Assembly (NCBI RefSeq): GCF_006345805.1
Contig: NW_021823699.1
Location: 1-21,635 of the forward strand
Source of the DNA: Octopus sinensis
Lineage: Eukaryota
DNA length: 21,635 bases
Reading direction: 5' to 3'
Part shown: piece after piece, positions 1,291-21,635 of the stretch
Layout: the number at the start of each line of letters is the position of its first letter
Numbering within the stretch: the first letter of the stretch is position 1
The notes under the pieces: model-generated
Databases searched by the model: none
Seen by the model: only the letters and a program-made list of their open reading frames with translations
What the model was told of the DNA's origin: nothing
Program-made: the position numbers and the translations under genes

Positions 1291-2360
1291 GGTACTTAAA
1301 AACAGCACATTTATTACAAAAGCACCGATGCCCAGCAATACCTAAATTTCAAATCATGCCACCCTACACACACAAAATGCAACATCCCGTACTGTCTAAC
1401 CAGGAAAATTTGTACTATAGTAGATGATCGAAATACTAGGAACACGCGACTTATAGAAATCAAAGAATTTCTGCTCAAGCAAAATTATCCTCTCCTACTT
1501 ATAGAAAATAGCATACAACGAGCAAACGAGAAACCTATAGAATAGCTTAGGGCAACACGAAGAAGACGAACCCATCATCGAAACACAATACCATTTCTAG
1601 TAACACACAATCCGCATCACCAAAACATATTTAACATCATCAAAACAAATTTACCAGTCATAAAACAAAGTGAAAAATTAAAATACATAATAACTAATCA
1701 AACACTTATCTTAAGCAAAAGGCAACCACATAATCTAAAGAAACTATTAACAAAGGCAAAATGCAACAGAAATGAAAACAGGATAACACATTCACAGCAT
1801 CCAAGTGTAATGATAACAAATGTGGAACGTGTCAATACATGCATTCTGGTAGATCCATTAGAATAGAAAATGGACAGATTTTGGCAAATGCAGATATGAA
1901 CTGCAAAAGTAGAAATTTGATCTACTGCAGTAAAATCCCCGAATTGCGATACAGGGAATGCATTATCGGAACGCTCACGAGTCCACAGAAACCAAATCCG
2001 GAACATCAATATTCGCCAAATTCCATTGAGCGAACATATAGAGACGTGGTCAGAAAATGTTTCTAATATTTCCTTTCCGCAAACTACGTGACACAAGTAA
2101 GGTTGGAAGAAAGATAAAAGAAAAATGGTTTATTAAAATGTTCAAACCTGTTTGGAATGGATATAACAGCAATAATATAACAGCCAGTTAATGATGTGGA
2201 TTAATAGACATAAACAAGTTACAGAATATCGGTACGCCTGACAAACCATGATGTTTAAGAGCATGCGGATTGATCAAAAAGGTATTCTAAAAATTCAGCT
2301 GATTGGAGCGTTCTAAGAGGTACTAAAAGTTGTCAAGAATTCAACTGTCAGTTAAACACA

Positions 2361-2404: not shown

Positions 2405-2487
2405 TTAAAATATAATAATTAAAAAAAACTTTATTTAACTGATATTGTTATTCTATACACATTCACACAAATTCGAAACACTAAATA

Positions 2488-2490
<3 letters not shown>

Positions 2491-2565
<75 letters not shown>

Positions 2566-2631
2566 GAAGAGTGAGAGAGGGAGAGAGGAAGAGAGTGCTA
2601 GATAGATAGACAGATAGATAGATAGATAGAT

Positions 2632-2681
<50 letters not shown>

Positions 2682-2743
2682 TAATAGATAGACAGATAGA
2701 CATACAGACAGATAAATAGATAGATATATAGATAGATATAGAC

Positions 2744-2794
<51 letters not shown>

Positions 2795-2831
2795 GAGATA
2801 GATAGATAGACAGACAGACAGACTGACAGAC

Positions 2832-2908
<77 letters not shown>

Positions 2909-2909
2909 T
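2491..2909. repeat. Compound microsatellite (TC)n-(TA)n-(GA)n followed by long (GATA)n
   Basis: Read directly from the sequence. It explains the IYLS-repeat ORFs in the ORF track. Confidence 0.98.
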
Positions 2910-3044
2910 AATGTTACCTGAGGAAGGTTTGCGAAATGGACGCATTTCCTCTTACATATCACGCATGCCAGAAAGGTATGTATTAAATGGTTTCAAAAAT
3001 CACTGTTTGGCTTGACTTCATTATTACAATATATATATATACAA

Positions 3045-4371: not shown

Positions 4372-4475
4372 CGGTAAGCTTTATGAAAAAGACAAAGACG
4401 AAGGCAGGTTACGGAAATAAACAAAAGACGAAGGCAGGTGGAATACAAACAAACAATTGTATTAGTATGATACTC
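4371..4475 (-). repeat. Repeat fragment related to the 3' part of the 4183-4306 element, opposite orientation
   Basis: The reverse complement contains ACTAATACA...TTGTT...TCTTTTGTTT, which is also present at ~4233-4290. It has an internal duplication of AAAGACGAAGGCAGGT. Confidence 0.4.
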
Positions 4476-4804
4476 TTTACTCTTTTTACTCTTTTACTTG
4501 TTTCAGGCATTTGATTTCGGCCATGCTGGAGCACCGCCTTTAGTCGAGCAACTCGAGACCCCGAGACTTATTCTTTGTAAGCCTAGTACTTATTCTATCG
4601 TCTCTTTTGCCAAACCGCTAAGCTACGGGGACGTAAACACACCAGCATCGGTTGTCAAGCGATGCTGGGGGTGGAGACAAACACACACACACACAATATA
4701 TATTTATATACATATACATACATAGGACGGGCTTCTAAATCCACTCACAAGGCTTTGGTCGGTCCGAGGCTAAGCAAGCTACTTACCACACAGCCACTCC
4801 TGCG

Positions 4805-4839: not shown

Positions 4840-5094
4840 TATGAAGGAAAATATAATATGATATAAATTTGGGTGAATGCCTCTTTCAATACGCTTTGAA
4901 AATAGAGCCCAACTTTATCCTGTACATTATCCAGTTCATATCACGGCAGTCCTTAGATATTGTTACTCATTTCTAATGACAAGTACAATTTGTAAATCCG
5001 ATTCACAAATTATTTTGGGTGCATTAATCACGGAGGATATTGGAAAGTAAAAAACATAAAGAATGAAATGCAATTTCAACGGTTTATTTAATTT

Positions 5095-5514
5095 ACAGTC
5101 GAACCAATTCTACTACATGGCTCAGAAACCTGGACGTTATCAAAGAAGCTTGAGAGGCGGTTGGATGGAACCTACACTCGCCTCCTTATGAGAGCTCAAA
5201 ATCTCTCGTGGAAGCGTCATCCAACCAAAATGCAAATATATGGGAAATTACCACCTGTATCATCTCTTGTGAAAGGTAGAAGAGTCCAGTTTGCTGGACA
5301 TTGTTGTAGAGCTGAAAACGAGGTAATTTCTACTCTTCTCCTCTGGAGGCCATCTACTCGCAATACCAGAGGGCGCACACTCTCCTACCCTGATGTAATC
5401 TCCAGGGATACAGGCATCCAGCAACAGGACCTCCGTAATGCTATGATGGACCGTGAAGTCTGGCGTAACATAGTAAATTCCATTGTCTCGACATGGTCGA
5501 ACAACGATGATGAT
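5095..5514 (+). mobile_element. 5'-truncated RTE-clade LINE, ORF C-terminus and tail
   Basis: TVEPILLHGSETWTLSKKLERRLDG...RRVQFAGHCCRA...AMMDREVWRNIV is a typical RTE C-terminus. A TCGAC-atg-GTCGA hairpin (5488-5500) precedes a (GAT)3 tail. Confidence 0.9.
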
Positions 5515-5754
5515 AATAGTTTACACGTGTTGCAAATAGCACAGCACAATGCAAGCGTTGCATTCATTAAAATATGGATATTTAACTGATTCTTCAATTC
5601 ATCGATAAATTCGACAGAAACACGTAGTCTCTAACTGCAAAGCTATTTCTTTCAAAATGTTTCTACGCGCGCGTGCGCATACACGCACACACATACACAT
5701 ATATACTCACGCAAACACACGCACATACACAAACACAGACAAAATTTACATAGG

Positions 5755-6148
5755 GGCGCAGGCGTAGCTGTATGGTAAAAAATCTTGCTACCCATGTATA
5801 TGGTTCACGATTCAGTCCCACTGCATGGCCTCTTGAGCAAGTGTCTTCTATTATAGCCTCGGGCCAACTAAAACCTTGTGAGAGGATTTGGTAGACGGAA
5901 ACTGAAAGAAGCCTGTCGTATATATACTATATGTGTATATTTAAATGTTTGCGTGTGTTTGTGTCTGTTTGTCCTCCACCACTGTTGTTGGTGTGTTTAC
6001 TCCCCGCAACTTAACAGTTCGGCAAAGGAGAATAACAGAATAAGTACTAGGCTTTAAAAAATATGTTCTGGGATTCGATCCGTTTGATCGTTTGACTAAA
6101 ATCTTCCATGGCCGCAATCAAATGGCTGAAACAAATAAAAGATAAAAA

Positions 6149-6150
<2 letters not shown>
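5755..6150 (+). mobile_element. tRNA-derived SINE family A, diverged copy
   Basis: Colinear with 8727-9148: head, TTCAGTCCCACT B-box region, GGTAGACGGAAACTGAAAGAAG, internal TA/TG tract, CTGAAACAAATAAAA tail. Confidence 0.9.
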
Positions 6151-6351: not shown

Positions 6352-7290
6352 ATACAAAATATTCCGAAAGAATATTAAATAGAATAGATGGAATATTAGA
6401 AACAAAGAAGAGATCATTAGAAAAGGCATTGTAACAAACGTGTTCGCGGTGAGAATCCCTCTCAACCAATTCTTCAACGCGAAGCACGAAGTTTGAATTT
6501 TCAGAGCTATGGTGCGTGCTCGTGCTCTAAGACACGAATGAATGAAAGACACTCGGCTGGTGATGGTTCAACATGGTCCCTAAAGAACCAAAATTCACTC
6601 TTTGGTGGACAAAAATGGTCGTATGCCACTCTAGTTCAGCCAGATGAGTTTGTCATTTCATCAGGACTTCGCTCGACAGTTTGAAAAAAATGACGGACCG
6701 AAACAAAGGGTAACAAATAAACTTTTGCCCATATCTCTTCTACTAAAGGCAAATTTCAAAATTTTGTCCTAAGTAATAGTGAAGGTTATAGTGTTTTTCG
6801 TCGAGAGACTGATTGGTGATGCACAAAACATGAGCCATCCCAAGAAGATCTATTCGCAACAACCTCCACCTCATGCGATACATCATAGAAAAGGTGGGTA
6901 AAGAATGGATGGGGCGCTTATCAATTTGGATCGATCAAAATCCTTCGATTGGGTCGACCACCAGTATTTTGAAGCCGTTTACACAATGGTCGGATTAGGT
7001 TCCCTCTTCTGCTACAGAATTACCGCAATGTACAGTGACATCTGCTCGGTAGGTTGGGTGAATGGTTACCTATGGGAACCATTCACTATTACCCGTTCCC
7101 CTCTCTTCTATATGTACTAACTCTAAAACATCTACTGTGAAAACTGAAGTCGTTGAGGTGCATCCCACGCGAACACTAGGATGCGAAAGAACCGTACAGA
7201 CATATGCAGTCGATGCCATCGTCATTGTGTCAACCACCAAGCGCATAGACGCTTCTCTAAAACAATACGAGGCGATGACAGAAACAAAAA
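6352..7290 (+). mobile_element. Decayed L1/Tx1-clade LINE ORF2 fragment with internal deletion
   Basis: Linker-like NQFFNAKHE..RAMVRARAL and IHSLVDKNG (6465-6620). RT motifs RRSIRNNLHLMRYII, ALINLDRSKSFDWVDHQY, PLLYVL (the QGCPL motif is deleted) and TYAVD (decayed YADD). Confidence 0.8.
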
Positions 7291-7419
7291 CTCGGCACTT
7301 AGAGAGACAAGTCCAAGCTATTCAATAACGCTGTGCGAAGCTGAACCGGCAATGCGGTTAATTTAAAGAAACTTTTGGTGAAAGCGAGGATAATTTTTCA
7401 GCTTCAACTTGTACATTTT

Positions 7420-7755
7420 ACTATGAAATCTGTTTCAGAAATTTTTTTCAGGAGTAAACAACAGGCCGCAGTAATGAGTAATTTTATTCCCATAGAAATA
7501 CATTTCAGTAATTGATTTGTTGTGACATGTAGCTTTGGTAAAACTTATCAAAAGCCGATATAAGCACAAAGTAACCTACACTTTTTGTTATGACAAGTCA
7601 ACTTGTTGTGATTTATTTCATAAACCTTTGTCTAAACTCAGTTTATCACTGAAGTTCTCATGGGAAATATTACGGTGAGAAAAGATGTTTCACCTGCGTA
7701 AGTCGTCATTGGCATTCACCTTTACTACAACATGAAAAAGTTTATGAACCATGAA
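7420..7755 (+). repeat. Unclassified ~330-bp dispersed direct repeat, copy 1
   Basis: Shares TGACATGT, GTAAC, ACAAGTCAAC, CTAAACTCAGTTTAT (7632), TTCTCATGGGAAA and AAAGTTTA blocks, in the same order, with copies 2-4. Confidence 0.9.
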
Positions 7756-8174
7756 GGAACGCTTGGGGTTAACATGCGAATACGTTTATAGCCATGCTCT
7801 TAGAAATAGAAGTGAAATTTCTCTCAAATAGAAGCTATGTTCTTTAAAATATATAACATAATACAAATGCAAATTTATATATCATGTCAACAAAATAATG
7901 ATGATGCTGATGATTACAACGATGAGGAAGATTATTCTTATGAATGTTGGTGAACCCCATACAAGATTTCACTGGGAACACTCCTATATTTCCTTTTCCA
8001 AGTGCGTTATATTGTTTATATGATATAACAAGAAGACGAAAGTGAAAGAAACACATTGCATCGCATAAATCATAACCAAGATGAGTGGATATTGATAGAT
8101 GTGTAGACTGTGGTCATTTTGATTTTTCTTTTGCTGCTGCTTATATTAAACTTCATGAATACCACTTCATCATA

Positions 8175-8361
8175 GGCGCAGAAGTGGCTGTGAGGTTAGA
8201 AACTTGCTTACCAACCACATGGTTACGGGTTCAGTCCCACTGCGTAGCACCTTGGGAAAGTGTCTTCTGCTATAGCCTCGAGCCGACCAAAGCCTTGTGA
8301 GTGGATTTGGTAGACGGAAACTGAAAGAAGGCCGTCGCATATATGTATATATATATATATG

Positions 8362-8396
<35 letters not shown>

Positions 8397-8598
8397 ATGT
8401 TTGTGTGTGTGGTGTGTGTGTATGTTTGTGTGTGTTTGTCCCCCGAACATTGCGGTTCGACAAAAGAGACAGTTAGAATAAGTACTAGGCTTACAAAGAA
8501 TAAGTCCCGGGGTCGATTTGCTCGACTAAAGGCGGTGCTCCAGCATGGCCGCAGTCAAATGACTGAAACAAGTAAAAGAATAAAAGAATAAAAGAATA
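8175..8598 (+). mobile_element. tRNA-derived SINE family A
   Basis: A-box-like TGGCTGTGAGG, B-box-like GGTTCAGTCCC, internal (TA)n(TG)n, (TAAAAGAA)n tail. Confidence 0.95.
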
Positions 8599-8726
8599 CG
8601 ATCAGCCACGAGATCTTGGATGAGATTTTGCTGAGCATGGCTTTCAAGTCATTTAATCTGCCAGAAATATATCTTCAACTACATACAGAACTTGTATTTC
8701 GCTACAGTTTATATAGATTAATCACA

Positions 8727-8897
8727 GGCGCAGGAGTGGCTGTGTGGTAAGTAGCTTGCTTACCAGCCACATGGTTCCAGGTTCAGTCCCACTGTGTGGC
8801 ACCTTGGGCAAGTGTCTTCTGCTATAGCCCCGGGCCGACCAATGCGTTGAGAGTGGATTTGGTAGACGGAAACTGAAAGAAGCCTGTCGTATATATG

Positions 8898-8948
<51 letters not shown>

Positions 8949-9148
8949 TTGTCCCCCTAGCATTGCTTCACAACCAATGCTGCGTGTTTACGTCCCCGTT
9001 ACTTAGCGGTTCGGCAAAAGAGACCAATAGAATAAGTACTGGGCTTACAAAGAATAAGTCCCGGGGTCGATTTGCTCGACTAAAGGCAGTGCTCCACCAT
9101 GGCCGCAGTCAAATGACTGAAACAAGTAAAAGAGTAAAGAGTAAAGAG
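8727..9148 (+). mobile_element. tRNA-derived SINE family A, near full length
   Basis: A-box-like TGGCTGTGTGG, B-box-like GGTTCAGTCCC, internal (TA)n, (GTAAAGA)n tail. Confidence 0.95.
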
Positions 9149-9159
9149 AGGTCAGTAGT

Positions 9160-9577
9160 GAATAAAAGTCATATGGTATTTAAGTCTCTGGTCCTCCCTA
9201 TTTTGGTCTATAGTTGTGATTCTTGAACACTGTCTAAGTGCTGCTTGAACTACCTTGGTTCTACAGGTTACCATTGGTTGGATTTTATTTGTATGATTCG
9301 GAAGCGTCGGCTCAGACCGTTTGGTTCTGTTGATCTATTTTCTAATTAGATCCTACGTATCATGTTCTCTAATCTGAGAATTCGGCTGGGATGACGGCTC
9401 ATGTTGATCGGCCAATTGCCTCATGGTAACGATGGATGAGGAAGTATTTTATAGAGGTGGGAACTGGGACACTTATCGAGGGGTTGTTCGAGAAGACTCG
9501 AGCAAATACTAAGAAATAGTTGATGTAGTGACGTGCTGCAATGGCGCATGACCCCCCCCCCCATAATTAACCTTACC
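9160..9577 (+). mobile_element. Old RTE-clade LINE 3' fragment
   Basis: VFKSLVLPILVYSCDS*TLSK...GYHWLDF..MIRKRRLRPFG resembles the RTE C-terminus (LxPxLLYGCETWTL; RxRxLRxxGH). It ends in CCCATA...ACCTTACC. Confidence 0.7.
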
Positions 9578-10124
9578 AGCTCTGACTGCACCTTCATTTG
9601 TTTTCACACAAGCTTTCTAGTACTACCGTTTCCAGTGATTATTCTTTGTGGTCATTTAGCCGTAGTTCATCCCTGATCTAACACACATATGATCTAAGTA
9701 CCATGATCAGTCTGTTTTTTTTTCTGAATAGTTCCAAATGTGGCCATCTCTTTTATTCAAATATACATTACCTACATTTTTCTAATGGGACTACATTATC
9801 CAATGTGTCCTTCCTTCTTGTAGATTAGCGCCTTATTAGTCCTGATCCCGCAGATCTATGATCAAAGTTGACCCAGCTGTAATTACCTTCATCGTTTCTT
9901 TTAAACGATCAATCAGACTTATGGCGAAAATCATCTCCTGTTGTGACAATGTTATCTTTTATTCAAACCTGGTGTACTCAGACATTAGTTCTTGTTTAGC
10001 AGAATTATGATCATAGATACTAGCGCTGTGACCGTCCTGAATTTTAATCAGAAAGAATGCATCTCAGTGCACAGATTCTAACATGCCTTTTCTTGTCGAT
10101 GACGTCCGACCCTAGGTCCATTGT

Positions 10125-10422
10125 CACGTGACGTCACGTGACCGACCAGGCTATCTAATTTTGGTATAAATCGCTGGTCACAATGCGATTCGCATTGTTT
10201 TAGCCTTCAAATGACGCCACCCCGCTAGCTAAGTGAGCAGGACAACAGAAGGAAGAGTGAGAGAAAGTTGTGGGGAAAGAGTACAGCAGGGATCGCCGCC
10301 CCCTGCCGGACTTCGTGGAGCTTTAGGTGCTTTCGCTCAATAAACACTCACAACGCCCGGTTTGGGAATCGAAACCGCGATCCCACGACCGTGAGTCCGC
10401 TGCCCTAACCATTGGGCCATTG
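10125..10422 (-). mobile_element. tRNA-derived SINE family B
   Basis: Reverse complement of 12051-12350. A CCATTGT direct repeat at 10118-10124 and 10417-10423 may be the TSD. Confidence 0.93.
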
Positions 10423-10537
10423 TATTATCACTATTATAGATCTAGTGGGTTGCCATCGTCCAACAAATTTCCGCCCGTGACCCTCATGCACAACAGAGAA
10501 TAATCTGTTTCTTTTTTTACTTTTTTATTGAGACATA

Positions 10538-10753
10538 CGAGTAGGTGCAGAAAAGTTCCTGGTTTTGGGTAAAAGAAAACAAAAGTAGATCGGTTAATTG
10601 CAATTTCATCCAACATATTCCCCTCTCAGATTCACAGACTTATTGCAGCGATTCTTCAGTTTTTCTAATCCCTGTAAAAGACTTCGGAAAGCTGGGCCTC
10701 CAGCCAAGCCTTTTGCGATTCCTTTGAAGCCAGAAACTTTTCAGTATCTCCTA
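10538..10753. mobile_element. Tc1/mariner-type MITE
   Basis: Imperfect ~28-bp TIRs CGAGTAGGTGCAGAAAAGTTCCTGGTTT and AAGCCAGAAACTTTTCAGTATCTCC. TA at the left boundary (10536-10537) and TA at the right end. No ORF. Confidence 0.75.
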
Positions 10754-11085
10754 TAATGTATGACCGAATGCAATATTAAAAATAACCCTCACAGTGCTGT
10801 TTATTTTGCTTTTGTTTTTGTTTCGACACCAGATCATCCCTCTCTAAGCAGCATCACAATCAAATATCTTCTAGAAATGACCATTTAAATCATCGAAGCT
10901 AGGTTTTCTGTCTTCGTACATGTTGAACGTGAATAATTGAAGAGGTCGATCAGATGTAAATACATTTATTTCTCTGTGATTTTTTAGAAACCAAGAAGAG
11001 AAACCTCAGTTATCAGTTTTCCATGGCCTGCAAATGATTGAGATCCTAACATTGCCCTGAACGGGATGCGAGGCCGTTGCAGGGT

Positions 11086-11193
11086 GTGTATGTGTGTATG
11101 TGTGTATGTATGTGTGTATGTATGTATGTATGTATGTATGTATGTATGTATGTATGTATGTATGTATGCCTGTATGTGTGTATGCATGCATGC

Positions 11194-11230
<37 letters not shown>
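11086..11230. repeat. (TATG)n + (TA)n microsatellite
   Basis: Read directly from the sequence. Confidence 0.95.
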
Positions 11231-11234
<4 letters not shown>

Positions 11235-11481
11235 ACAATTAAGGATAACTTCTTAATAAGGAATCTTAACAAGAAATTATCAGGTAGATAGCGTGAAAAA
11301 CCTCATAAGACAAAAATTTCGAAAATAATTCTTTCTTATTGAACATATTAATTTATATATAGAGGGCATTATTACACATAAATGCCTCACGCTAAGAGGG
11401 ACATCAGTCATTTCTACCAAAAAATTTTACTAATCATGCCCAATGCAATTTTTCAAAGCAAGACATTTAAAAAATGAATTT

Positions 11482-11549
11482 AGTCATATATCACCTGTGA
11501 TTTCGCACTTACCGCAGAAGAATTTGCGACCATGCTCATCAGTAATACT
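11482..11549 (-). ncRNA. Type I hammerhead ribozyme, left-arm copy (core intact, stem I with two mismatches)
   Basis: Minus strand reads AGTATTA-CTGATGA-GCA...TGC-GAAA-TCACAGGTGA-TA-TATGACT. Confidence 0.7.
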
Positions 11550-11780
11550 GATTCTGAACATATAAATAAACGACCAGTACCGTCAAAGTCGAACAGCCAA
11601 TTGCTCTATTCCAACGAAGCACATGGAGAAGTTTACAAATCATATATCCGGTAAATATTCGAAGAAGCCCGCCATTTACCGGATATATGATTTGTAAACT
11701 TCTCCATGTGCTTCGTTGGAATAGAGCATTTGGCTGTTCGACTTTGACGGTACTGGTCGTTTATTTATATGTTCAAAATC

Positions 11781-11848
11781 AGTCTTACTGATGAGCATGG
11801 TCGCAAATTCTTCTGCGGTAAGTGCGAAATCACAGGTGATATAAGACT
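11781..11848 (+). ncRNA. Type I hammerhead ribozyme, intact
   Basis: Stem I AGTCTTA (11781-87)/TAAGACT (11842-48) is a perfect 7 bp. Core CTGATGA (11788-94). Stem II GCA/TGC extended by CGCA/TGCG. GAAA (11826-29). Stem III TCA-cagg-TGA. AUA triplet with predicted cleavage after 11841. Confidence 0.88.
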
Positions 11849-11968
11849 AAATTCATTTTTTAAATGTCTTGCTTTGAAAAATTGCATTGGGCATGATTAG
11901 TAAAATTTTTTGGTAGAAATGACTGATGTCCCTCTTAGCGTGAGGCATTTATGTGTAATAATGCCCTC

Positions 11969-12013
<45 letters not shown>

Positions 12014-12050
12014 TGTATGTGTGTGTGTGTGTGTGTGTGTGAGTGTGTGT

Positions 12051-12349
12051 GGAGGCGCAATGGCCTAGTGGTTAGGGCAGCGACTCGCGGTTGTAGGATT
12101 GCGGTTTCGATTCCGAGACCGAGCGTTGTGAGTGTTTATTGAGCGAAAACACCTAAAGCTCCACGAGGCTCCAGCAGGGAGGAAGGAGCGATTCCTGCTG
12201 TACTCTTTGCCACAACTTTCTCTCACTCTTTCTTCTGTTGGCCTGCTCGCTTAGCCAGCGGGGTGGCGTCATTTAAAGGTTAAAACAATTCGAAGCGCAT
12301 TGTGACCAGCGATGTGTAACAACATCTGATAGCCTGGTCGGTCACGGTG

Positions 12350-12350
<1 letters not shown>
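12051..12350 (+). mobile_element. tRNA-derived SINE family B
   Basis: A-box TGGCCTAGTGG, B-box GGTTTCGATTCC, tail GCCTGGTCGGTCACGGTGA. It lies between (TG)n and (TA)n tracts. Confidence 0.95.
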
Positions 12351-12415
<65 letters not shown>

Positions 12416-12675
12416 GTCGGTGTGTGTGTGCTGTGTGCGCGTGCGAGTGTGTGTGTATGTAAAACTATGTAGGTTAAGGCAGTATCTCAGAGATCGAAAG
12501 CTAACCAAAACAGTAATACATTAACTTCGAAGGTAATAATTAATATTAAAAATTAGTTCTATTTTCGTAGAATTTCCTTATTATATTGATAAAAGCATTT
12601 TTTTTTTTGCGTGGAAGCTTCATTTTACTTTATCTGGAGTTCACACTATAAGCATTTGACGGGGAAATATGTATC

Positions 12676-12988
12676 ACAATGAAATTTAACAAAATTGATG
12701 GTGAATTTTCTTTCCCAGAAAGATACATTCTTAGTATTTGATTTGTTTTGACATGTAGCTTTGGTAAAGCTTAAATAAAGAGCATATCAGCACCAGGTAA
12801 CCTATATTTTGTCATAACAAGTCAACATGCTAATTTTTACTTAAAAAAACTTTAGTCTAAACTCAGTTTATTACTAAATTTCTCATGGGAAATTTACGAC
12901 GAGAAAAAAATAATTTCGTCAGTACATGTTGTCGATGGCATTCGCGTCTATTATAAGAGGAGAAAGTTTACGAACACACGATGTGGCT
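12676..12988 (+). repeat. Unclassified dispersed direct repeat, copy 2
   Basis: Same conserved blocks as copy 1; CTAAACTCAGTTTAT at 12857. Confidence 0.9.
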
Positions 12989-13002
12989 ACGCGAATGTAA
13001 AA

Positions 13003-13300
13003 GGATGAATTTTATTTCCCAGAAAGATACTTTTTGATATTGATTGATTTGCTGTGACATGTGACTTCGGTAAACCTTATCAAAAGAATAGCTAAGCAAC
13101 AGGTAACCTACATTCTATTACGACAAGGCAAAATGTTATGAGTTACTTGAAAAAAACCTTAGACTAAACTAAGTTTATTACTGAAAAGAGTTCTTATGGG
13201 AAATACTGAGGTTGGAGGAGATGCAGTTTCGGTTACGCTGGTGTCAATATCGTTTACCTATGTCATAATACGAGAAAGTCTACGGATACAAAATGTGGTT
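13003..13300 (+). repeat. Unclassified dispersed direct repeat, copy 3 (tandem to copy 2, most diverged)
   Basis: TTTCCCAGAAAGATAC, TGACATGT, CAGGTAACCTA, CTAAACTAAGTTTAT (13164), TTCTTATGGGAAA. Confidence 0.85.
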
Positions 13301-13380
13301 ATTCGACTTCCTTGAAACATCTTTACATCTCACTCAAATAACAAAAAGTATACTCTATTAGAGGATACAAATCCTTTGTA

Positions 13381-14230
13381 TTTTTAATGTTTTATGCATT
13401 TCAGCTCAAAGGCAGTGGCCATGCTAGGGCACCGCCAGTACTAACACCTTTCCTATGGCCATTCATTTATGGTTGTCTTTTGATGAAGGAGGGGGTTCGG
13501 TATTGCTGCTCTCTTTTGAGTTTCTTGCCATGGTGTAGATTCAAGTAGGACCTTAAACAGCAGAAGATCGAGTTGTTTTTTGAAAACATCAACTCCTACA
13601 CTATGTAGGTCACTCAGAGCTTTTGGCAAGCTATTAAATAGTTCTCGCGCTAGCTATCATGCCAAGCTATGGACCTCAATTTAGACGGGAGGGGTAGAAC
13701 CTTTGGAACATGGCAATGACATCTGCTTCGGGGTCTGTTATAAATCTCGATGCCAAAGTTTGGTACCAACTTTTCTAGGATCTTCCATATGTATATCACT
13801 ACATGTCTCTCCCGTCTTCGCTCCAAGGAGTAGAGTCATAGCTCTTTCAGTCTCTCCCAGTGGCTCAGCTGTTCCATCGCTGCAATCAGTTCGAAATAAC
13901 ATATGATGGTATGTGTATTTCAGCAGCTGCAACGCCAGAGATCAGGTGTATTGCTTGATTATATGTAACTAAGTCTCTCAGGAATTGGGTTTTGCGTTGA
14001 TGGGATTTTACAAGGCTGTTGACATTCAGCAGATATATTGGTGTGACATACAGAGTTTCTTGTATCAAGATTCTTCAGGGTTTCCGCAATTAGATTGTTT
14101 GGCAGTGATCGTTCTGCAAAGTTCCATGCTAGGCACATCGTTTTGATTTCCTCAAATTGTCAGTTTCTTTGTAATTTAAAGGTGGTGCTGTCTTTGCTGT
14201 AGTTGGTTTTGATGAGCTCCATGTTCTTGA
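13381..14230 (-). mobile_element. CR1-superfamily LINE with internal deletion (endonuclease start fused to ORF2 C-terminus and 3' UTR)
   Basis: Minus strand gives LLNVNSLV..FLRDLV..AEIHIPSYV(L)FRTD (APE N-terminus) joined to HWERLKEL*LYSLERRRERHVVIYIWKILEKLVPN...LFNSLPK...VDVFKKQLD, with a stop at 13453-13455, then a 3' UTR ending in TAAAACATTAAAAA. Confidence 0.85.
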
Positions 14231-14640
14231 GATAGGGAGGCAGAGAGGGCAAGAAAAAGTAGAGACAGATAAGCAGATAAAAGGGTAGAGAGAGGTCGGT
14301 AGTAAAGAAAGTCAAGAAAAGTAGAGAGAGCAGTAGAGATAGAGAAACGTAAGTGGAGATGAAGAAACAAAGAGAGAAAAACGAAGATAAGAGAGATAGG
14401 GAGAGAGAGAGAGAGAGCTGAGTGAAAATATGTGAGAAAGAGAGATCGATGTAAATAGAAAGTGAAGAGAGTGAAAGAATGTGGAGATGAGGGAGAGAGA
14501 AGGATAAATCAATATAAATAGAAGAGATAGTGGAAATGGATGTCAAAGAGAGGTCAATGTAGATATAAACGAAGAGGAGTAACAAAGAGATAGAAAGGGA
14601 AGAAAGAGTGAGAGGTATAGAGAAAATAGATCAATTTAAG
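14231..14640. repeat. Purine-rich (AG-biased) low-complexity tract
   Basis: About 400 bp of mostly A/G on the + strand; probably a decayed (AG)n/(AGAT)n array. Confidence 0.85.
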
Positions 14641-15447
14641 TGTAACTAGAGATAAAGACACAACTCAGAGGTGGTGATAAAAATTCTGTCTGACATTAGA
14701 CATGTGATAATGAAAATATATAAAAATTATCAGTATGTATCGAGGAAGGCAGAAAAAAAGAGATAATAATAAACTTTTGTTTCTGTTACCTTCAGATTGG
14801 TCCGATTAAAACGAAATAAATTTCTTCTCACTTTGTGTACTTACCCAACTTCAATGATCTAACCTACGTGATTTACTATCGAAAAATGTAAACAAACCTC
14901 AGATTCCAGAAATTCTTGTATTTGATACTCTTTTGCAATCTACAAAATTGCATACAAACGTTTGGGTCATACAAGTCGGAATCTTCCGATCGTATTTTTC
15001 AAAGTACAGTCATACGTAGATATGAAGATATATTTACTCAACGATTAGGCGAGTTGGCCTTAATCTTTTAACGTCGAAAAATTCCTTAAAAACTGCATTA
15101 CGGTTGATGGAATTAAAATATTGTTTTTTTTAAATTATGGTATAATGGCAGTAATATATTTCAACCAGAGACCAATTAGATTTCAGTTCAATTCGATCTA
15201 ATTGGAATTTGCCGATTCTTCCAGTATCTTAGCTTGACAGCTTTAACAAGCCGGAGTCATCTTATAAAATAAAAATTATGAAAACAAATAATATCGATGA
15301 TCTTAATGTTGCGAAATATTATTGATACAGTCAACATTTATGATAGTCTTTCGGTGACAATATTGAGTTCAGCCAAAACCGAAACTTATTTTACTAGATT
15401 AATCTGATATTCTAGATATAAAGCTCAAAGTGCTGGAAAAAAATTAT

Positions 15448-15601
15448 GCTTACGAACCACATGGTTCCGGGTTCAATCCCACTGCGTGGCAACTTGGGCA
15501 AGTGTATTCTACTATAACCTCGGACCGACCAATACCTTGTGAGTGGATTTGGTAGACGGAGACTGAAAGAAGCCCATCGTATATGTATGTATATATATAT
15601 A

Positions 15602-15654
<53 letters not shown>

Positions 15655-15880
15655 GGTGTGTGTGTGTTGTATGTTTGTATGTCTGTGTTTGTCCCCCCAA
15701 CATCGCTTGACAACCGATGCTGGTGTGTTTACGTTCCCGTAACTTAGCCGTTCGGCAAAAGAGACCGATAGAATACGTACTAGGCTTACAAAGAATAAGT
15801 CCTGGGGTCGATTTGCTCGACTAAAAGACGGTATTCCATCATGGCCGCAGTCAAAATGACTGAAACAAGTAAAAGACTAA
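15448..15880 (+). mobile_element. tRNA-derived SINE family A, 5'-truncated (A box missing)
   Basis: Begins GCTTACGAACCACATGGTTCCGGGTTCAATCCC; otherwise colinear with 8727-9148. Confidence 0.93.
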
Positions 15881-16129
15881 ATATAGACAATGATGATAAT
15901 ATCAGGATGATAGCGATGATAAGGATTATTGTTATCAATATCTATAAATTCGATAAATGATCGCAGTGAGATTATTTTCACACTTCCTTCGATAAATATA
16001 AAAATTCTTATCTGGTTTAATAAGAAGACGGATGTGAAAGAAACAGTATTGTGGGATTGATAACTGATGAAGTAGAACAATGATAGCTCTACAAAAAATG
16101 AAGTTAACACCTTGTTACTTCTGATATCT

Positions 16130-16633
16130 GGAGGTGCAATGGCCCAGGTGTAAGGGCAGCGGACTCGCGGTCCTAGGATCGAGGTTTCGATGCCCAGACC
16201 AGGCATTGTGAGTGTCTATTGAGCGAAAACACCTAAAGTAGTGGTGATCCCTGCTGTACTCTTTCACCACAACTTTCTCTCACTCTTTCCTCCTGTTTCT
16301 GTTGTACCTGTATTTCAAAGGGCCAGCCTTGTCACACTCTGTGTCACGCTGAATTTCCCGAGAACTACGTTAGGGGTACACGTGTCTGTGGAGTGCTCAG
16401 CCACTTGCACTTAATAAATGAGCTGCGACGTCAATGGTGCCAAGCTGTATCGGCCCCTTTGCCTTACCCTTGGATAACATCGGTGGCGTGGAGAGGGGAG
16501 GCCGGTATGCGTGGGCAACTGCTGGTCTTCCCTAAACAACCTTGCCCTGACTTTTGCCTCGAAGGGTAACTTTCTAGGTGCAATCCCATGGCCATTCATG
16601 ACCGAAGGGCGTCACAATCACACACACACACAC
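16130..16633 (+). mobile_element. SINE with family B head and a different, longer 3' body; (CA)n tail
   Basis: The head matches 12051-12230; sequence after ~16295 does not match family B. Perfect 13-bp TSD ACTTCTGATATCT (16117-16129 and 16634-16646). Confidence 0.92.
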
Positions 16634-16899
16634 ACTTCTGATATCTCATACCTATAGAGAAATAGGATTTTCTATTCTTTTATTCAAATAATAATATATC
16701 ATGGGCAACATATAATAATGTGTACTTCTTTGTCGTTGTAGATATTATTTAAACCTGCGCACATTTAGTCATCATTGTTGCTTGTCTTCTATTAATGCAT
16801 GGTGTACCTAGTATTACGTTATCGAATGTGTCCCTCGTTGTTATTATTCCTAATTTAAAAGATCTTGCTTATATTAAGAAGTGGTGTATCTAGGACTAC

Positions 16900-17285
16900 A
16901 TTACCTGGTGTATATTTTATTTATATTAGCATTATTTTTGGTCTCTTTCAGAAGACCTTCATCATCTGACCATCCGGTTGTGCTAAGAGAAACCTGTCTT
17001 TCAGCCAGTCATAGTGTATCAAGGACTACAACATTATCTAATATCTTCTTCCTTGTTGCTGCTCGGTCAATGTAGATCCATCAGATTTATAACCAATATG
17101 TGTTTCAGGAGTGATTGTTTTGTCTTTCATTCCAAACGAAGGTTCCTCTCTTTGGACATTATATGCTTTATTTTTAAGAAGTTTCGATACGATCCTATTA
17201 TGGTTTCGTTATTTTAAGCCAAGTCTAGGTGCCGTAGAATGTCCATTTATTGATAATTCACCGTTATCAGATTCAAGATTGAACA
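16900..17285 (-). mobile_element. Possible decayed C-terminal fragment of an RLE-type (R2/NeSL/R4-like) non-LTR element
   Basis: Minus strand K*RNHNRIVSKLLKNKAYNVQREEPSF...GYKSDG loosely resembles the RHNxIV...EP...KPD signature. It is degenerate and has stops. Confidence 0.3.
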
Positions 17286-17287
17286 TT

Positions 17288-17500
17288 GCGGCGAGCTTGC
17301 AGAATCGTTAACACGCCGGGGAACACGTCTAACGGCATTTCATCCGTCTTTACATTCTGAAATCTAATTCCGCGGAGGTCGATTTTGCTTTTCATCATTT
17401 CGGGGTCGATAAAATAAGTACCAGCTAAGCATTGGGGTCGATATAATTGATTTACCCTTCTCCTAAACTTTCTGGCCTTGTGCCAAAATTTGAAATCAAT
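17288..17500 (+). mobile_element. tRNA-derived SINE head family C, alternative tail, diverged
   Basis: Colinear with 1059-1230 (GCGGCGAGCTTGCAGAATCGTT...GGGGTCGATAAAATAAGTACCAG...GGGGTCGAT), then diverges to GGCCTTGTGCCAAAATTTGAAA. Confidence 0.85.
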
Positions 17501-17556
17501 GTTTAACTAAGTCTAGTGTTCAGAGAGCTTATACTTTTGAAGAAAAGATTGTTAAT

Positions 17557-17915
17557 ACTATGAAATTAACAGAAAAGTTATTCAGAAGAAAACAAGCTGC
17601 AAAATGGCGAATTTCATTTCGAAGCGAAATGATACATTTTTAGTAATTGATTTTTTGTGACATGTAGTTTTGATAAAACTTAACACACACAAAAAAAAAA
17701 AAAAGCCGAAGAAGAAACATATAAGCACCAGGTAACTTATATTTCGTTATGACAAGTCAACATGTTATGAATTACTTCAGAAAAACATAGTCTAAACTCA
17801 GTTTATTGCTTAAGTTCTCATGGGAAAAATCACGGTGAGAAAAAGCGTAAGTTTTACCTGCGCGGGGCTTCAATGACATTCAACTCTACCACAAGAGGAG
17901 AAAGTTTACAAACCA
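17557..17915 (+). repeat. Unclassified dispersed direct repeat, copy 4 (with an internal A-run insertion)
   Basis: TACTATGAAAT shared with copy 1; TGACATGT, CACCAGGTAAC, CTAAACTCAGTTTAT (17792), TTCTCATGGGAAA. Confidence 0.9.
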
Positions 17916-18230
17916 CAAGAAAGTCAGTCTAATTTCTGGAAATAGCAGTCGAATTTACCAGAAATCAGACATTTATAGGAACATATTAGATAATACAAAC
18001 ATATGTACATTGTGCATGAAATAAAGATCTTTGTAATGATGATGACGATGATGTTTTAATATTGACAAAGTTTGTTATTGTCAGTAACAGGGGGACCATA
18101 CAAACAACTACACTGAAATGGTTTTCACATTTGCTTCACCAATGAATGTCAATCTTATTTAAATGGAGTATGGAAGTGAAAGATACATACTCTATTTTGG
18201 AATTGACAACAAAGGAGACTGGACAACAAT

Positions 18231-18568
18231 CTCTCTCTCTCTATCCGCTCAGTCGAAGTCGACTCTCGGTTACTCAATGGATCAGTGTTCTCTAGCCGGT
18301 TCTATCCTGGGCCGCTTCTTTCAGATTGGCTATGTCCATTCCCGTATCACTCTTGATGGTGTCAAGCCCGCGGGTTCTTGGTCGGCTTTTTCCTCTCTTG
18401 CCACTGACCATTCCGAGCTTGATGTCCTTCTCCAGGGATTTTCTCCGCATAATATGACCAAAATATGTCAATCTATGCTTGGTGATCCTAGCTTCTAGTG
18501 ACAGTTTTGGCTTGATCTGGTTAAGAACTTCTCCATTGGTGAGCCTCGCTGTCCATGGAATCCGTAAA
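18231..18568 (-). mobile_element. 5'-truncated BovB-like RTE LINE
   Basis: Minus strand LRIPWTARLTNGEVL...LTYFGHIMRRKSLEKDIKLGMVSGKR...ESRLRLSG* closely parallels the BovB C-terminus. (GA)n tail. 13-bp TSD ACTGGACAA(C/T)AAT (18218-18230 and 18569-18581). Confidence 0.92.
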
Positions 18569-19259
18569 ACTGGACAATAATAGATGCGTGAAATATTATG
18601 TTATTGCGGTTAACTCCAGGTCAGACCTTATTCACCAAATATTTCGATCAAACTTAGCGTAAACGTAAATCTCCAGTGCTTTTTCTTTTCTTTTCTTTTT
18701 AATTTACGTAGTAATGTACCAAGAAGTACAAATGTGACTAATTTTTGTTAGATGAAGAATGGCTCAAATCCTATCACTAAATTTGTTCTGGGTGTTAAGT
18801 CTATGTTTTAACTGTATATTTATCCATTGTTTTACTGCGGTTACATTTTGTCAGGCATCTCTTTATATTCTTATTGTTGCTTCATTGAGTTTTGTACAAG
18901 ATAATTCTTGCAGATCAATGATTAAGGGCGCTCCTTCCATGACCAGCCCTTAATTTAAATACGGAGATGTACTTTGATTACAGCATATAAATGTCTCTCG
19001 TTGTTGTTATTTAGTCACATGTCATCGATCAACCATCAGTGACCAAGTTATTCTACTTTACCATTATATATTTTGGCCGAATTCTGCTTTAAACACGCCA
19101 TATAACCACTAATGACTTTCTATTTTTGGGAATTTTCAGAAAACTTTTGTGAATTTGTATTCTACCACTCCTTGTTTCATAACCCGTGTCTTTCTATCCT
19201 GGCTGCTATTTCCTGTAGTAGGCAAAACCTGTACATACACACACATCACAAATATATGC

Positions 19260-20880: not shown

Positions 20881-21232
20881 GTGACGTATTTTTGCCATTT
20901 CAATAGGCTAACCCCTAAGGTGGATGCTACTGTAGTTTTTAGCCCCAGGAGGACACACTCCTCCAGCTGGCCATAGACACACTTTCTGTGTCCTGTCAGT
21001 ATTTGCAAAGGGAAGTCATCCTTCCCGTCTTCAACTTATGATACACACGGACTCGAGTTTCGAGGTATTGACCTCTCGTCAGCGTGTGACAATCGTAGTT
21101 GTCGCCGAGATTAGATTTCCTTCACAAATACTTATACTTTTTCCAGCGTCCACTGTCGCTGATATTGAAAAAGTGAAATCAAACAATGAATAATATCAAA
21201 GTGAGTTATATACAATAGCGGTAACACATCGT

Positions 21233-21235: not shown

Positions 21236-21287
<52 letters not shown>

Positions 21288-21498
21288 AGAGAGAGAGAGA
21301 TTTACTTGCATAGCGAGTGACTTGATCTGAGATCGTGTGCTGGAACGAAAACAATTGCAGCGTGGAAGGTGTTTATAAGCCATTTAAGAAACACACAAAA
21401 ACCGTTAGATTCACTTCAACATTTAATTTAATTGTTGAAGTGAATCTAACGGTTTTGTGTGTTCTTAAATGGCTTATATATACCTTCCACGCTGCAAT

Positions 21499-21635
<137 letters not shown>

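What the first reader, a model, noticed from the sequence alone, without database searches (positions are those of the whole stretch)
7420..17915. Unexplained ~330-bp element in four same-strand copies at ~5-kb spacing
Seen: copies at 7420-7755, 12676-12988, 13003-13300 and 17557-17915. The anchor CTAAACT(C/A)AGTTTAT lies at 7632, 12857, 13164 and 17792 (gaps 5225, 307, 4628). Copies are clearly diverged, yet the DNA between them is unrelated TE debris. No TIRs, TSDs, Pol III boxes or tails are visible. Each unit has an internal repeat close to TTGTTRTGACAWGT. Inference: relic of an ancient tandem array in which only this module persisted, such as a repeated exon, promoter/enhancer or ncRNA unit. 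A locally hopping unclassified TE is the alternative.
Basis: partly seen in the sequence, partly recalled or inferred. Interest (0 to 1): 0.7.

Follow-up and report, generated by a model that had tools for sequence, protein, structure and literature searches.

The report
Decayed local tandem repeat in octopus
The four look-alike ~300-bp stretches are real; with seven more on one other small scaffold they are the worn-down remains of a single local tandem duplication, later pushed apart by transposon insertions, with no convincing sign of a gene, an RNA or a mobile element.

Summary
Four + strand copies sit at 7421-7755, 12677-12987, 13002-13299 and 17558-17915, and the anchor motif is at exactly the stated positions. 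The window is a whole 21.6-kb unplaced scaffold of a 2.72-Gb, 13,516-scaffold assembly, figures that match Octopus sinensis. Genome-wide searches find only seven further copies, all on one other unplaced scaffold (C11595), so this is not a dispersed TE.

The repeated unit is larger than 330 bp. The ~305-bp core (M) carries homologous flanks, so units span at least 0.5-0.8 kb, and three units hold a head-to-tail M-M dimer. The intervening DNA is high-copy SINE, LINE and foldback sequence inserted later.

The ten full cores form a star tree at 64-80% identity, with nearly uniform substitution rates. There is no ORF, no Rfam match, and no covariation in the 27-bp imperfect hairpin. Subterminal inverted repeats are absent.

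A weak excess of conservation exists: M is better kept than its flanks, and one 30-nt block is about twice as conserved as the rest. Concerted evolution explains this at least as well as function.

Verdict: an ancient, locally confined tandem array decaying roughly neutrally. Low interest.

The parts
7419..7475 (+). Unit A, proximal upstream leader (end of flank U)
   Evidence: It is colinear with 17556-17611 of unit C. The 100 nt upstream of M in units A and C align above the shuffled null, z=5.7.
7476..7755 (+). It contains an imperfect 27-bp palindrome at 7512-7601 and the anchor at 7632.
   Evidence: nhmmer E=1e-75. Identity to other cores is 71-78%. Hairpin MFE is -24.1 kcal/mol, z=-3.3.
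7756..8089 (+). Unit A, downstream flank D
   Evidence: One contiguous alignment spans 7419-8089 against 17556-18223 (63.5% over 718 columns, E=5e-58). The D profile hits 7775-7928 at E=1e-26.
12676..12988 (+).
   Evidence: nhmmer hit at 12699-12980, E=8e-75. The dimer is colinear with the dimers C11595:1464-1921 and 7023-7471.
13002..13300 (+).
   Evidence: nhmmer hit at 13002-13291, E=5e-73. The start-to-start period to M1 is 306-312 bp (D13, D15, D18).
13301..13380 (+). Unit B, remnant of flank D, cut off by a dispersed repeat that starts near 13374
   Evidence: 12996-13380 is colinear with 17598-18007. 13374-13670 matches many chromosomes at 74-80% identity.
17504..17611 (+). Unit C, upstream flank U and leader
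   Evidence: 17504-17908 is colinear with C11595:1385-1756. A weak U-profile hit lies at 17466-17600, E=0.03, in the expected position.
17612..17915 (+).
   Evidence: nhmmer hit at 17604-17914, E=3e-74. The insertion is visible in the alignment.
17916..18223 (+). Unit C, downstream flank D, ending where a LINE fragment begins
   Evidence: The D profile hits 17912-18054 at E=2e-29. It is colinear with unit A as far as 18223. 18226-18291 matches chromosome C28 at 95%.
8166..9150 (+). Later insertions that split the array: two SINE-like copies (8166-8600 and 8718-9150)
   Evidence: The two are 84% identical to each other, and 77-89% identical to copies at 15408-15881, 5755-6150 and on C11595. Genome-wide hits appear.
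10124..10422 (.). Later insertion: a high-copy ~300-bp repeat, with an inverted partner at 12058-12346
   Evidence: There are 10,513 first-look candidates, and the scored copies are 90-92% identical on many chromosomes. The inverted partner is I2.
11345..11985 (.). Later insertion: a foldback element with 312-nt arms, 98% complementary
   Evidence: I1. Dozens of copies at 85-98% identity lie on many chromosomes.
13374..15277 (.). Later insertions: dispersed repeats filling most of the gap between units B and C
   Evidence: 13374-13887 and about 14070-15277 match many chromosomes at 67-85% identity.

Best explanation
This is the fossil of one local tandem (segmental) amplification. An ancestral unit of at least 0.5-0.8 kb consisted of an upstream flank U, a ~305-bp core M and a downstream flank D. 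In some units M had itself doubled head-to-tail. The unit was amplified in place, presumably by unequal crossing-over or replication slippage, giving at least 8 units with 11 cores. Amplification, or homogenisation of the cores by gene conversion, then stopped, and the copies have since drifted apart to 64-80% identity. SINEs, LINE fragments, foldback elements and microsatellites inserted between and into the units and stretched the spacing to ~5 kb. One unit on C11595 was inverted. What is shown: the copy census, the local confinement, the dimers, the shared flanks, the TE nature of the spacers, and the star-like, nearly rate-uniform divergence. What is inferred: the amplification mechanism, the order of events, and the absence of present-day function.
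For: (1) Census. Genome searches with copy 1, with the consensus and with a degenerate 31-mer (10 true sites plus 1 three-mismatch hit; the reversed-pattern control gave 2) find only C170 (the window) and C11595. Profile scans of both scaffolds give exactly 11 cores. (2) Tandem structure. Three head-to-tail dimers, W12676/13002, C1465/1775 and C7016/7283, are colinear with one another. (3) Units extend past the core. Colinear alignments include 7419-8089/17556-18223, 17504-17908/C11595:1385-1756 and C11595:1284-1921/6829-7420. Homology runs until a TE insertion or fades out, rather than ending at a common sharp boundary. (4) Spacers are high-copy dispersed repeats at non-homologous positions. 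Some copies elsewhere are 90-98% identical, so those insertions are younger than the array. (5) Divergence. The tree is a star with no supported inner branch and terminal branches of 0.11-0.23. Gamma alpha is ~5, and BIC prefers no rate heterogeneity. (6) No functional signature. All six frames are closed, and no paralogous ORFs exist other than TEs. There is no Rfam hit at gathering thresholds on either scaffold and no tRNA. The hairpin shows 89.4% paired cells against 89.0% in shuffles.
Against: M is clearly better preserved than its flanks: 70-79% identity against 52-63% for D, and flank z-scores are mostly near 0 while M gives 8-38. Against an equal-rate simulation there are more invariant columns than expected (76 vs 60±7, P=0.012). 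A 30-nt block, TTGATTTGTTGTGACATGTAGCTTTGGTAA, has half the expected changes (22 vs 32±3.5, P=0.008). This could mean weak constraint. I favour concerted evolution or low mutability of T-rich sequence, because M identity does not track flank identity. The pair C1465/C7016 has U at 70.5% but M at only 71-75%. The orientation bias is weak at the unit level (3 of 3 and 4 of 5 in the same direction). Both scaffolds are unplaced, so the true extent of the array is unknown. Expression and cross-species data could not be examined.
Confidence: 0.66

Rival explanations
1. A tandemly duplicated non-coding functional module. Each M would be a hairpin-RNA (miRNA- or siRNA-like) gene or a cis-regulatory element kept by weak purifying selection.
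For: M is preserved better than its flanks. There is an excess of invariant columns, and a 30-nt block is about twice as conserved as the rest; it coincides with the 5' arm of a 27-bp G·U-rich hairpin that forms only in the + strand RNA. Hairpins in copies 1 and 2 are more stable than shuffles, z=-3.3 and -2.5.
Against: There is no covariation, and pairing is no better than column shuffles. Hairpin z-scores across the 10 copies run from -3.3 to +1.4, and several copies no longer fold into it. The anchor palindrome is degenerate or deleted in C11595 copies. Substitution rates are nearly uniform (alpha ~5, pinv ~0.1), unlike miRNA paralogues or TF-site arrays. There is no Rfam match. M identity does not scale with flank identity.
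Confidence: 0.12
2. A very low-copy non-autonomous transposon carrying internal tandem repeats, like the tandem-repeat-bearing Helentron derivatives (HINE, pearl) of bivalves, that multiplied by local hopping.
For: The modular layout of left flank, 1-2 central ~305-bp repeats and right flank recurs in all 8 units. That layout is what PMC7492417 describes for Cg_HINE elements. One unit is inverted. A star phylogeny is also what a burst of transposition gives.
Against: No copy lies outside two small scaffolds in 2.7 Gb. No conserved 11-bp subTIR pairs link the upstream and downstream flanks. The ends are not sharp and shared: homology ends at different points in different pairs, usually at a TE insertion. 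ARAGORN finds no tRNA-like Pol III gene, and no poly-A tail is evident in the aligned flanks.
Confidence: 0.13
3. An assembly artefact: the two scaffolds are haplotigs, collapsed pieces or contaminants, so the 'family' is inflated or spurious.
For: Both C170 (21.6 kb) and C11595 (42.5 kb) are unplaced. C11595 starts in the middle of a core. About 14% of this assembly lies outside chromosome-scale scaffolds.
Against: Cores on the two scaffolds are only 64-80% identical, as are cores within a scaffold, so they are not alleles. The scaffolds share only TE-level matches. Their TEs match chromosomes C1-C29 at up to 98%, so they belong to this genome. Four diverged copies lie on one contiguous sequence.
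Confidence: 0.03

Closest known systems
Old, degenerate tandem arrays (macrosatellite-like or segmental tandem duplications) fragmented by transposon insertions
   Same: It has a locally confined, low-copy family and surviving head-to-tail pairs. Flanks are shared and younger TEs fill the gaps. The cores show a star-like tree, as expected after amplification or homogenisation stops.
   Different: It is far more diverged (64-80%) and shorter (11 cores) than typical homogeneous satellites. The unit is composite (U-M-D with an optional M doubling). The chromosomal position is unknown because both scaffolds are unplaced.
Tandem-repeat-carrying non-autonomous Helentrons of molluscs (Cg_HINE, pearl; PMC7492417)
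   Same: The architecture is the same: left flank, 1-2 central repeats of a few hundred bp, right flank, with constant orientation of repeats relative to flanks. The host phylum is also Mollusca.
   Different: HINEs are dispersed genome-wide in many copies. They carry 11-12-bp subTIRs, an inner complementary IR, a microsatellite in the left flank and a 3' palindrome. None of these termini was found here, and there is no dispersal.
Clustered animal miRNA or hairpin-RNA genes
   Same: There are tandem paralogues on one strand, each with an ancestral ~27-bp imperfect hairpin. The most conserved block lies on the 5' arm.
   Different: The terminal loop is large (~26 nt). There is no covariation, the hairpin is lost in several copies, no Rfam family matches, and conservation is not concentrated in a ~22-nt mature sequence.

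Membership tests
Tandem repeat / satellite-type array (decayed) | Head-to-tail adjacency of repeat units | tested here: met
   Three dimers have a 306-312-bp period: 12677-12987/13002-13299, C11595:1465-1767/1775-2079 and 7016-7282/7283-7577.
Tandem repeat / satellite-type array (decayed) | Copies confined to one or a few loci rather than dispersed | tested here: met
   All 11 copies lie on two unplaced scaffolds. The consensus and pattern searches of the 2.72-Gb assembly found nothing else.
Tandem repeat / satellite-type array (decayed) | Sequence homogeneity among monomers (concerted evolution still active) | tested here: not met
   Pairwise identity is 64-80% and the tree is a star with terminal branches of 0.11-0.23. 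It is a relic, not an active satellite.
Tandem-repeat-carrying Helentron non-autonomous element (HINE) | Left flank - central tandem repeats - right flank, in constant orientation | tested here: met
   The U-M(-M)-D layout recurs in all 8 units. This is a resemblance of layout only.
Tandem-repeat-carrying Helentron non-autonomous element (HINE) | 11-12-bp subterminal inverted repeats and a 3' palindrome (as listed in PMC7492417) | tested here: not met
   No 11-mer inverted pair (up to 1 mismatch) at conserved positions links the upstream and downstream flanks of the 6 units tested. Power is limited by decay and uncertain ends.
Tandem-repeat-carrying Helentron non-autonomous element (HINE) | Genome-wide dispersal in many copies | tested here: not met
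   The core gave 8 first-look candidates, all on C170 or C11595. The 31-mer pattern found only the known copies.
SINE / Pol III retroposon | tRNA-, 5S- or 7SL-related head with A/B boxes, an A-rich or simple-repeat tail, and dispersal | tested here: not met
   ARAGORN finds no tRNA. Neither scaffold has a gathering-threshold Rfam hit, and none of the below-threshold window hits falls inside a copy. The family is not dispersed. The A-run in copy 4 is an internal insertion unique to that copy.
miRNA / structured ncRNA gene cluster | Hairpin conserved by compensatory change, more stable than shuffled sequence in all paralogues | tested here: not met
   Paired cells are 89.4% against 89.0% in shuffles (168 of 500 as high), with 2 double changes. 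The RNAalifold covariation term is +2.2. MFE z-scores run from -3.3 to +1.4.
miRNA / structured ncRNA gene cluster | Discrete small-RNA reads (a 5p/3p duplex) from the hairpin | not testable with these tools
   No expression data are available. The held supplements of the octopus miRNA paper contain no sequences: the let-7 positive control was also absent.
Repeated protein-coding exon | An open frame shared by the copies | tested here: not met
   Stops occur in all six frames of every copy. A 20-30-codon ATG-initiated sORF at 7423, 12679 and 17560 is not kept in the C11595 copies.

The most novel reading that the evidence does not exclude
The ~305-bp core is a lineage-specific functional non-coding module, kept in at least 11 tandem paralogues under weak selection. 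The most likely form is a + strand hairpin RNA locus producing small RNAs from the conserved 5' arm TTGATTTGTTGTGACATGTAGC. An alternative form is a repeated regulatory element. Its flanks and spacers would have decayed and filled with TEs.
Probability: 0.1. Interest if true: 0.5.

Novelty: new member of a known kind. Interest (0 to 1): 0.22.

Why it matters
It matters mainly as a clean negative. A conspicuous, regularly spaced repeat is explained as a decayed local tandem duplication plus later TE insertions. It is not a new mobile element, a repeated exon or an RNA family. It gives a small dated marker for TE insertion order in an unplaced, repeat-rich part of the octopus genome. It also illustrates that cores can stay more similar than their flanks, probably through concerted evolution, without being functional. 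If the weakly conserved hairpin arm turned out to yield small RNAs, it would add a lineage-specific tandem small-RNA locus in a clade noted for miRNA expansion. The present evidence does not favour that.

Tried and rejected
1. Coding exon. Six-frame translation shows stops everywhere. An all-against-all comparison of 6-frame ORFs from both scaffolds found only TE-derived pairs and the cores themselves. The sORF starting at ACTATGAAAT is kept only in the three window units.
2. Known RNA. Rfam gave nothing in the copies at E up to 1 on the window, and nothing at gathering thresholds on either scaffold. No tRNAs were found.
3. Conserved structure. RNAalifold predicts a 27-bp hairpin, but the covariation term is unfavourable. 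Pair counts equal the shuffles, and per-copy MFE z-scores are inconsistent.
4. Dispersed TE. The upstream neighbour C11595:6599-6803 did hit other loci, but those loci carry no U, M or D; it is an unrelated repeat.
5. HINE-type termini. No conserved subTIRs were found.
6. Other collections. A metagenome-contig scan with the 31-mer found 0 matches. No cephalopod genome other than G000 is reachable.
7. Octopus miRNA lists. The held supplements of PMC9699675 contain no sequences, since the let-7 control also failed, so that negative is uninformative.
8. Pfam on ORFs between the copies gave only a Mos1-type HTH and a sub-threshold RVT_1 match (E=2e-4, 21.4 bits against a 29.6-bit cut-off), both on C11595. 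The window ORF 5092-5586 has relatives carrying RVT_1 domains. No host gene was found on either scaffold.
9. Tandem continuity from the end of D into the start of U. Direct D-to-U continuity between neighbouring units could not be shown. At C11595:2152-2535 only truncated D and U remnants abut a SINE.
Full report
**Context.** The window is the whole of scaffold C170 (21,635 bp) of assembly G000, which has 2,719,151,902 bp in 13,516 scaffolds. A published table gives exactly these figures, 13,516 scaffolds and 2,719.2 Mb, for the chromosome-scale Octopus sinensis assembly GCA_006345805.1 (PMC10700109). About 14% of that assembly is outside chromosome-scale scaffolds, and C170 is one of those pieces.

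**Observation.**
- The four copies exist where stated. nhmmer with a profile of the four gives 7421-7755, 12677-12987, 13002-13299 and 17558-17915, all on the + strand.
- Their mean column identity is 73%.
- The anchor CTAAACTMAGTTTAT occurs at 7632, 12857, 13164 and 17792 and nowhere else, against 0 expected.
- The internal repeat TTGTTRTGACAWGT occurs six times, all inside copies, against 0.06 expected.

**Census.**
- Searching the genome with copy 1 and with a 288-nt consensus returns only C170 and one other unplaced scaffold, C11595 (42,544 bp). All 8 first-look candidates were scored in each search.
- A degenerate 31-mer with up to 3 mismatches finds the ten sites expected plus one three-mismatch hit. 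The reversed-pattern control gave two hits.
- Profile scans of both scaffolds give exactly 11 cores. Four are in the window. Seven are on C11595: 1-169 (cut by the scaffold start), 1465-1767, 1775-2079, 2552-2833, 7016-7282 and 7283-7577 on the + strand, and 10956-11241 on the - strand.
- The scaffolds are not haplotigs. Cores are 64-80% identical both within and between scaffolds, and the only high-identity matches between the scaffolds are TEs.

**Anatomy.** The repeated unit is larger than 330 bp.
- Lenient pairwise alignments are colinear well beyond the core M (~305 bp):
  - 7419-8089 with 17556-18223 (718 columns, 63.5% identity, E=5e-58)
  - 12996-13380 with 17598-18007
  - 17504-17908 with C11595:1385-1756
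  - 7450-7935 with C11595:2535-2989
  - C11595:1284-1921 with 6829-7420
- A profile of the downstream flank D finds four units at E values from 1e-26 to 1e-31. With the threshold relaxed it gives weak hits in the right position in two more units. The start of D is visible by eye after every unit.
- About 55 nt upstream of M is shared by nearly all units, and 80-180 nt by some.
- Homology ends at different points in different pairs, typically where a dispersed repeat begins. Examples are 8166, ~13374 and 18226 in the window, and 2146 and 3003 on C11595.
- Three units carry a head-to-tail M-M dimer, and the dimers are colinear with one another.
- There are thus at least 8 units of U-M(-M)-D. All 3 window units are in the same orientation, as are 4 of the 5 on C11595. 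At the unit level this is a weak orientation bias.

**Spacers.**
- The stretches queried return 27,736 (7756-12675), 10,513 (9151-11066) and 3,100 (13671-15407) first-look candidates. Scored copies lie on many chromosomes at 67-98% identity.
- The repeats include SINE-like copies (8166-8600, 8718-9150, 15408-15881) and a ~300-bp high-copy repeat (10124-10422, inverted at 12058-12346).
- They also include a foldback with 312-nt arms (11345-11985) and LINE C-terminal fragments (5092-5589 and 18292-18600). The first of these ORFs has relatives with RVT_1 domains.
- None sits at a homologous position in two units, so these insertions post-date the amplification.
- The ~5-kb spacing is thus a by-product of insertions. 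On C11595, units lie 1.2-4.3 kb apart.

**Sequence evolution of the core.**
- A maximum-likelihood tree of the ten full cores is a star. No inner branch is supported, and terminal branches are 0.11-0.23 substitutions per site.
- First and second monomers of the dimers do not group.
- BIC prefers models without rate heterogeneity. Gamma alpha is ~5 and the proportion of invariable sites is ~0.10.
- Compared with 500 equal-rate simulations on the fitted tree, there is a modest excess of invariant columns (76 vs 60±7, P=0.012).
- One 30-nt block, TTGATTTGTTGTGACATGTAGCTTTGGTAA, has fewer changes than the best window in simulations (22 vs 32±3.5, P=0.008). The permutation P for this block is 0.005.
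- M is also better kept than its flanks: 70-79% against 52-63% for D, where shuffled sequences align at ~45%. Most flank pairs score near the shuffle mean.
- M identity does not track flank identity. C1465 and C7016 share a U flank at 70.5% identity, yet their cores are 71-75% identical, like any other pair.
- That pattern fits cores that were homogenised until a common time, or amplified last, better than cores under steady purifying selection. This is an inference from few, noisy flank alignments.

**Tests of function.**
- No frame is open in any copy. A short ATG-initiated ORF is kept only in the three window units.
- No paralogous ORFs lie between units except TE-derived ones.
- No Rfam family matches in the copies, and nothing on either scaffold reaches a gathering threshold. 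ARAGORN finds no tRNA.
- RNAalifold predicts a 27-bp imperfect, G·U-rich hairpin (5' arm TTGATTTGTTGTGACATGTAGCTTTGGT).
- The covariation term is unfavourable, and 89.4% paired cells equals the 89.0% seen in column shuffles.
- Single-copy MFE z-scores range from -3.3 to +1.4.
- The anchor palindrome TAAACT-N-AGTTTA is intact in the window but degenerate or deleted in most C11595 copies.
- No conserved subterminal inverted repeats link the flanks. This, with the lack of dispersal, argues against the tandem-repeat-bearing Helentron derivatives known from bivalves (PMC7492417).

**Conclusion.** The best-supported reading is an ancient, locally confined tandem or segmental amplification of a composite ~0.5-0.8-kb-plus unit, since broken up by TE insertions and decaying close to neutrally. 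The amplification mechanism (unequal exchange or slippage), a period of concerted evolution of the cores, and the absence of present function are inferences. Terminal branches of ~0.18 substitutions per site suggest an age of tens of millions of years under any plausible metazoan nuclear rate, but no calibration was available. A weak residual conservation signal on the hairpin's 5' arm keeps a functional small-RNA or regulatory reading alive at roughly 10%.

**Limits.** No other cephalopod genome, no expression data and no TE library were reachable. Genome searches score only the best 40 candidates, so copy numbers of the spacer repeats are lower bounds. The single-copy status of some short flanks is therefore only probable.

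Noticed in passing
window 21044-21088 (-): There is a near-threshold type I hammerhead ribozyme motif (RF00163, 32.2 bits against a gathering score of 34, E=2e-6 on the 351-nt stretch). The CUGACGAG...CGAAAC...GUC core is intact. From my own knowledge, such minimal hammerheads are typical of Penelope-like retroelements and retrozymes in metazoans.
   Followed up: partly
window 11345-11656 / 11674-11985: A 312-nt inverted repeat is 98% complementary, with a 17-nt loop. It belongs to a very abundant foldback family: dozens of scored copies at 85-98% identity lie on many chromosomes, many with both arms.
   Followed up: partly
window 21348-21503 (+): A long, near-perfect hairpin scores 82.6 bits against the plant MIR2646 model (gathering score 245). 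This is almost certainly a palindromic MITE or foldback rather than a miRNA. Part of the adjacent sequence (21236-21348) matches C11595:25073-25183 at 87%.
   Followed up: no
window 8166-8600, 8718-9150, 15408-15881, 5755-6150, 4473-4776 (-); C11595 868-1247, 2146-2532, 12910-13341: A ~430-bp SINE-like family carries an internal (TA)n(TG)n microsatellite. The 5' region resembles a Pol III B box, judged by eye only. Eight copies on the two scaffolds are 66-89% identical.
   Followed up: partly
window 1546-2129: An ORF fragment (…CGTCQYMHSG…NCKSRNLIYC…) recalls the GIY-YIG endonuclease region of Penelope-like elements. It has no Pfam hit at E up to 0.01, so the assignment rests on memory only.
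   Followed up: partly
window 2480-3000: A ~0.5-kb compound microsatellite, (CT)n(TA)n(GA)n followed by (GATA)n/(GACA)n, accounts for most of the spurious miRNA-model hits in the Rfam E-value scan.
   Followed up: no
C11595 19541-20524 (+) (L011 9541-10000 and L012 1-524): A 328-codon open frame has a Mos1-type HTH_48 domain (E=4e-19). It looks like an apparently intact mariner-family transposase gene on the sister scaffold.
   Followed up: partly
C11595 30670-31740: A young, homogeneous 56-bp-period tandem array (~19 units, 95-97% identity between shifted copies) contrasts with the decayed 305-bp family.
   Followed up: no
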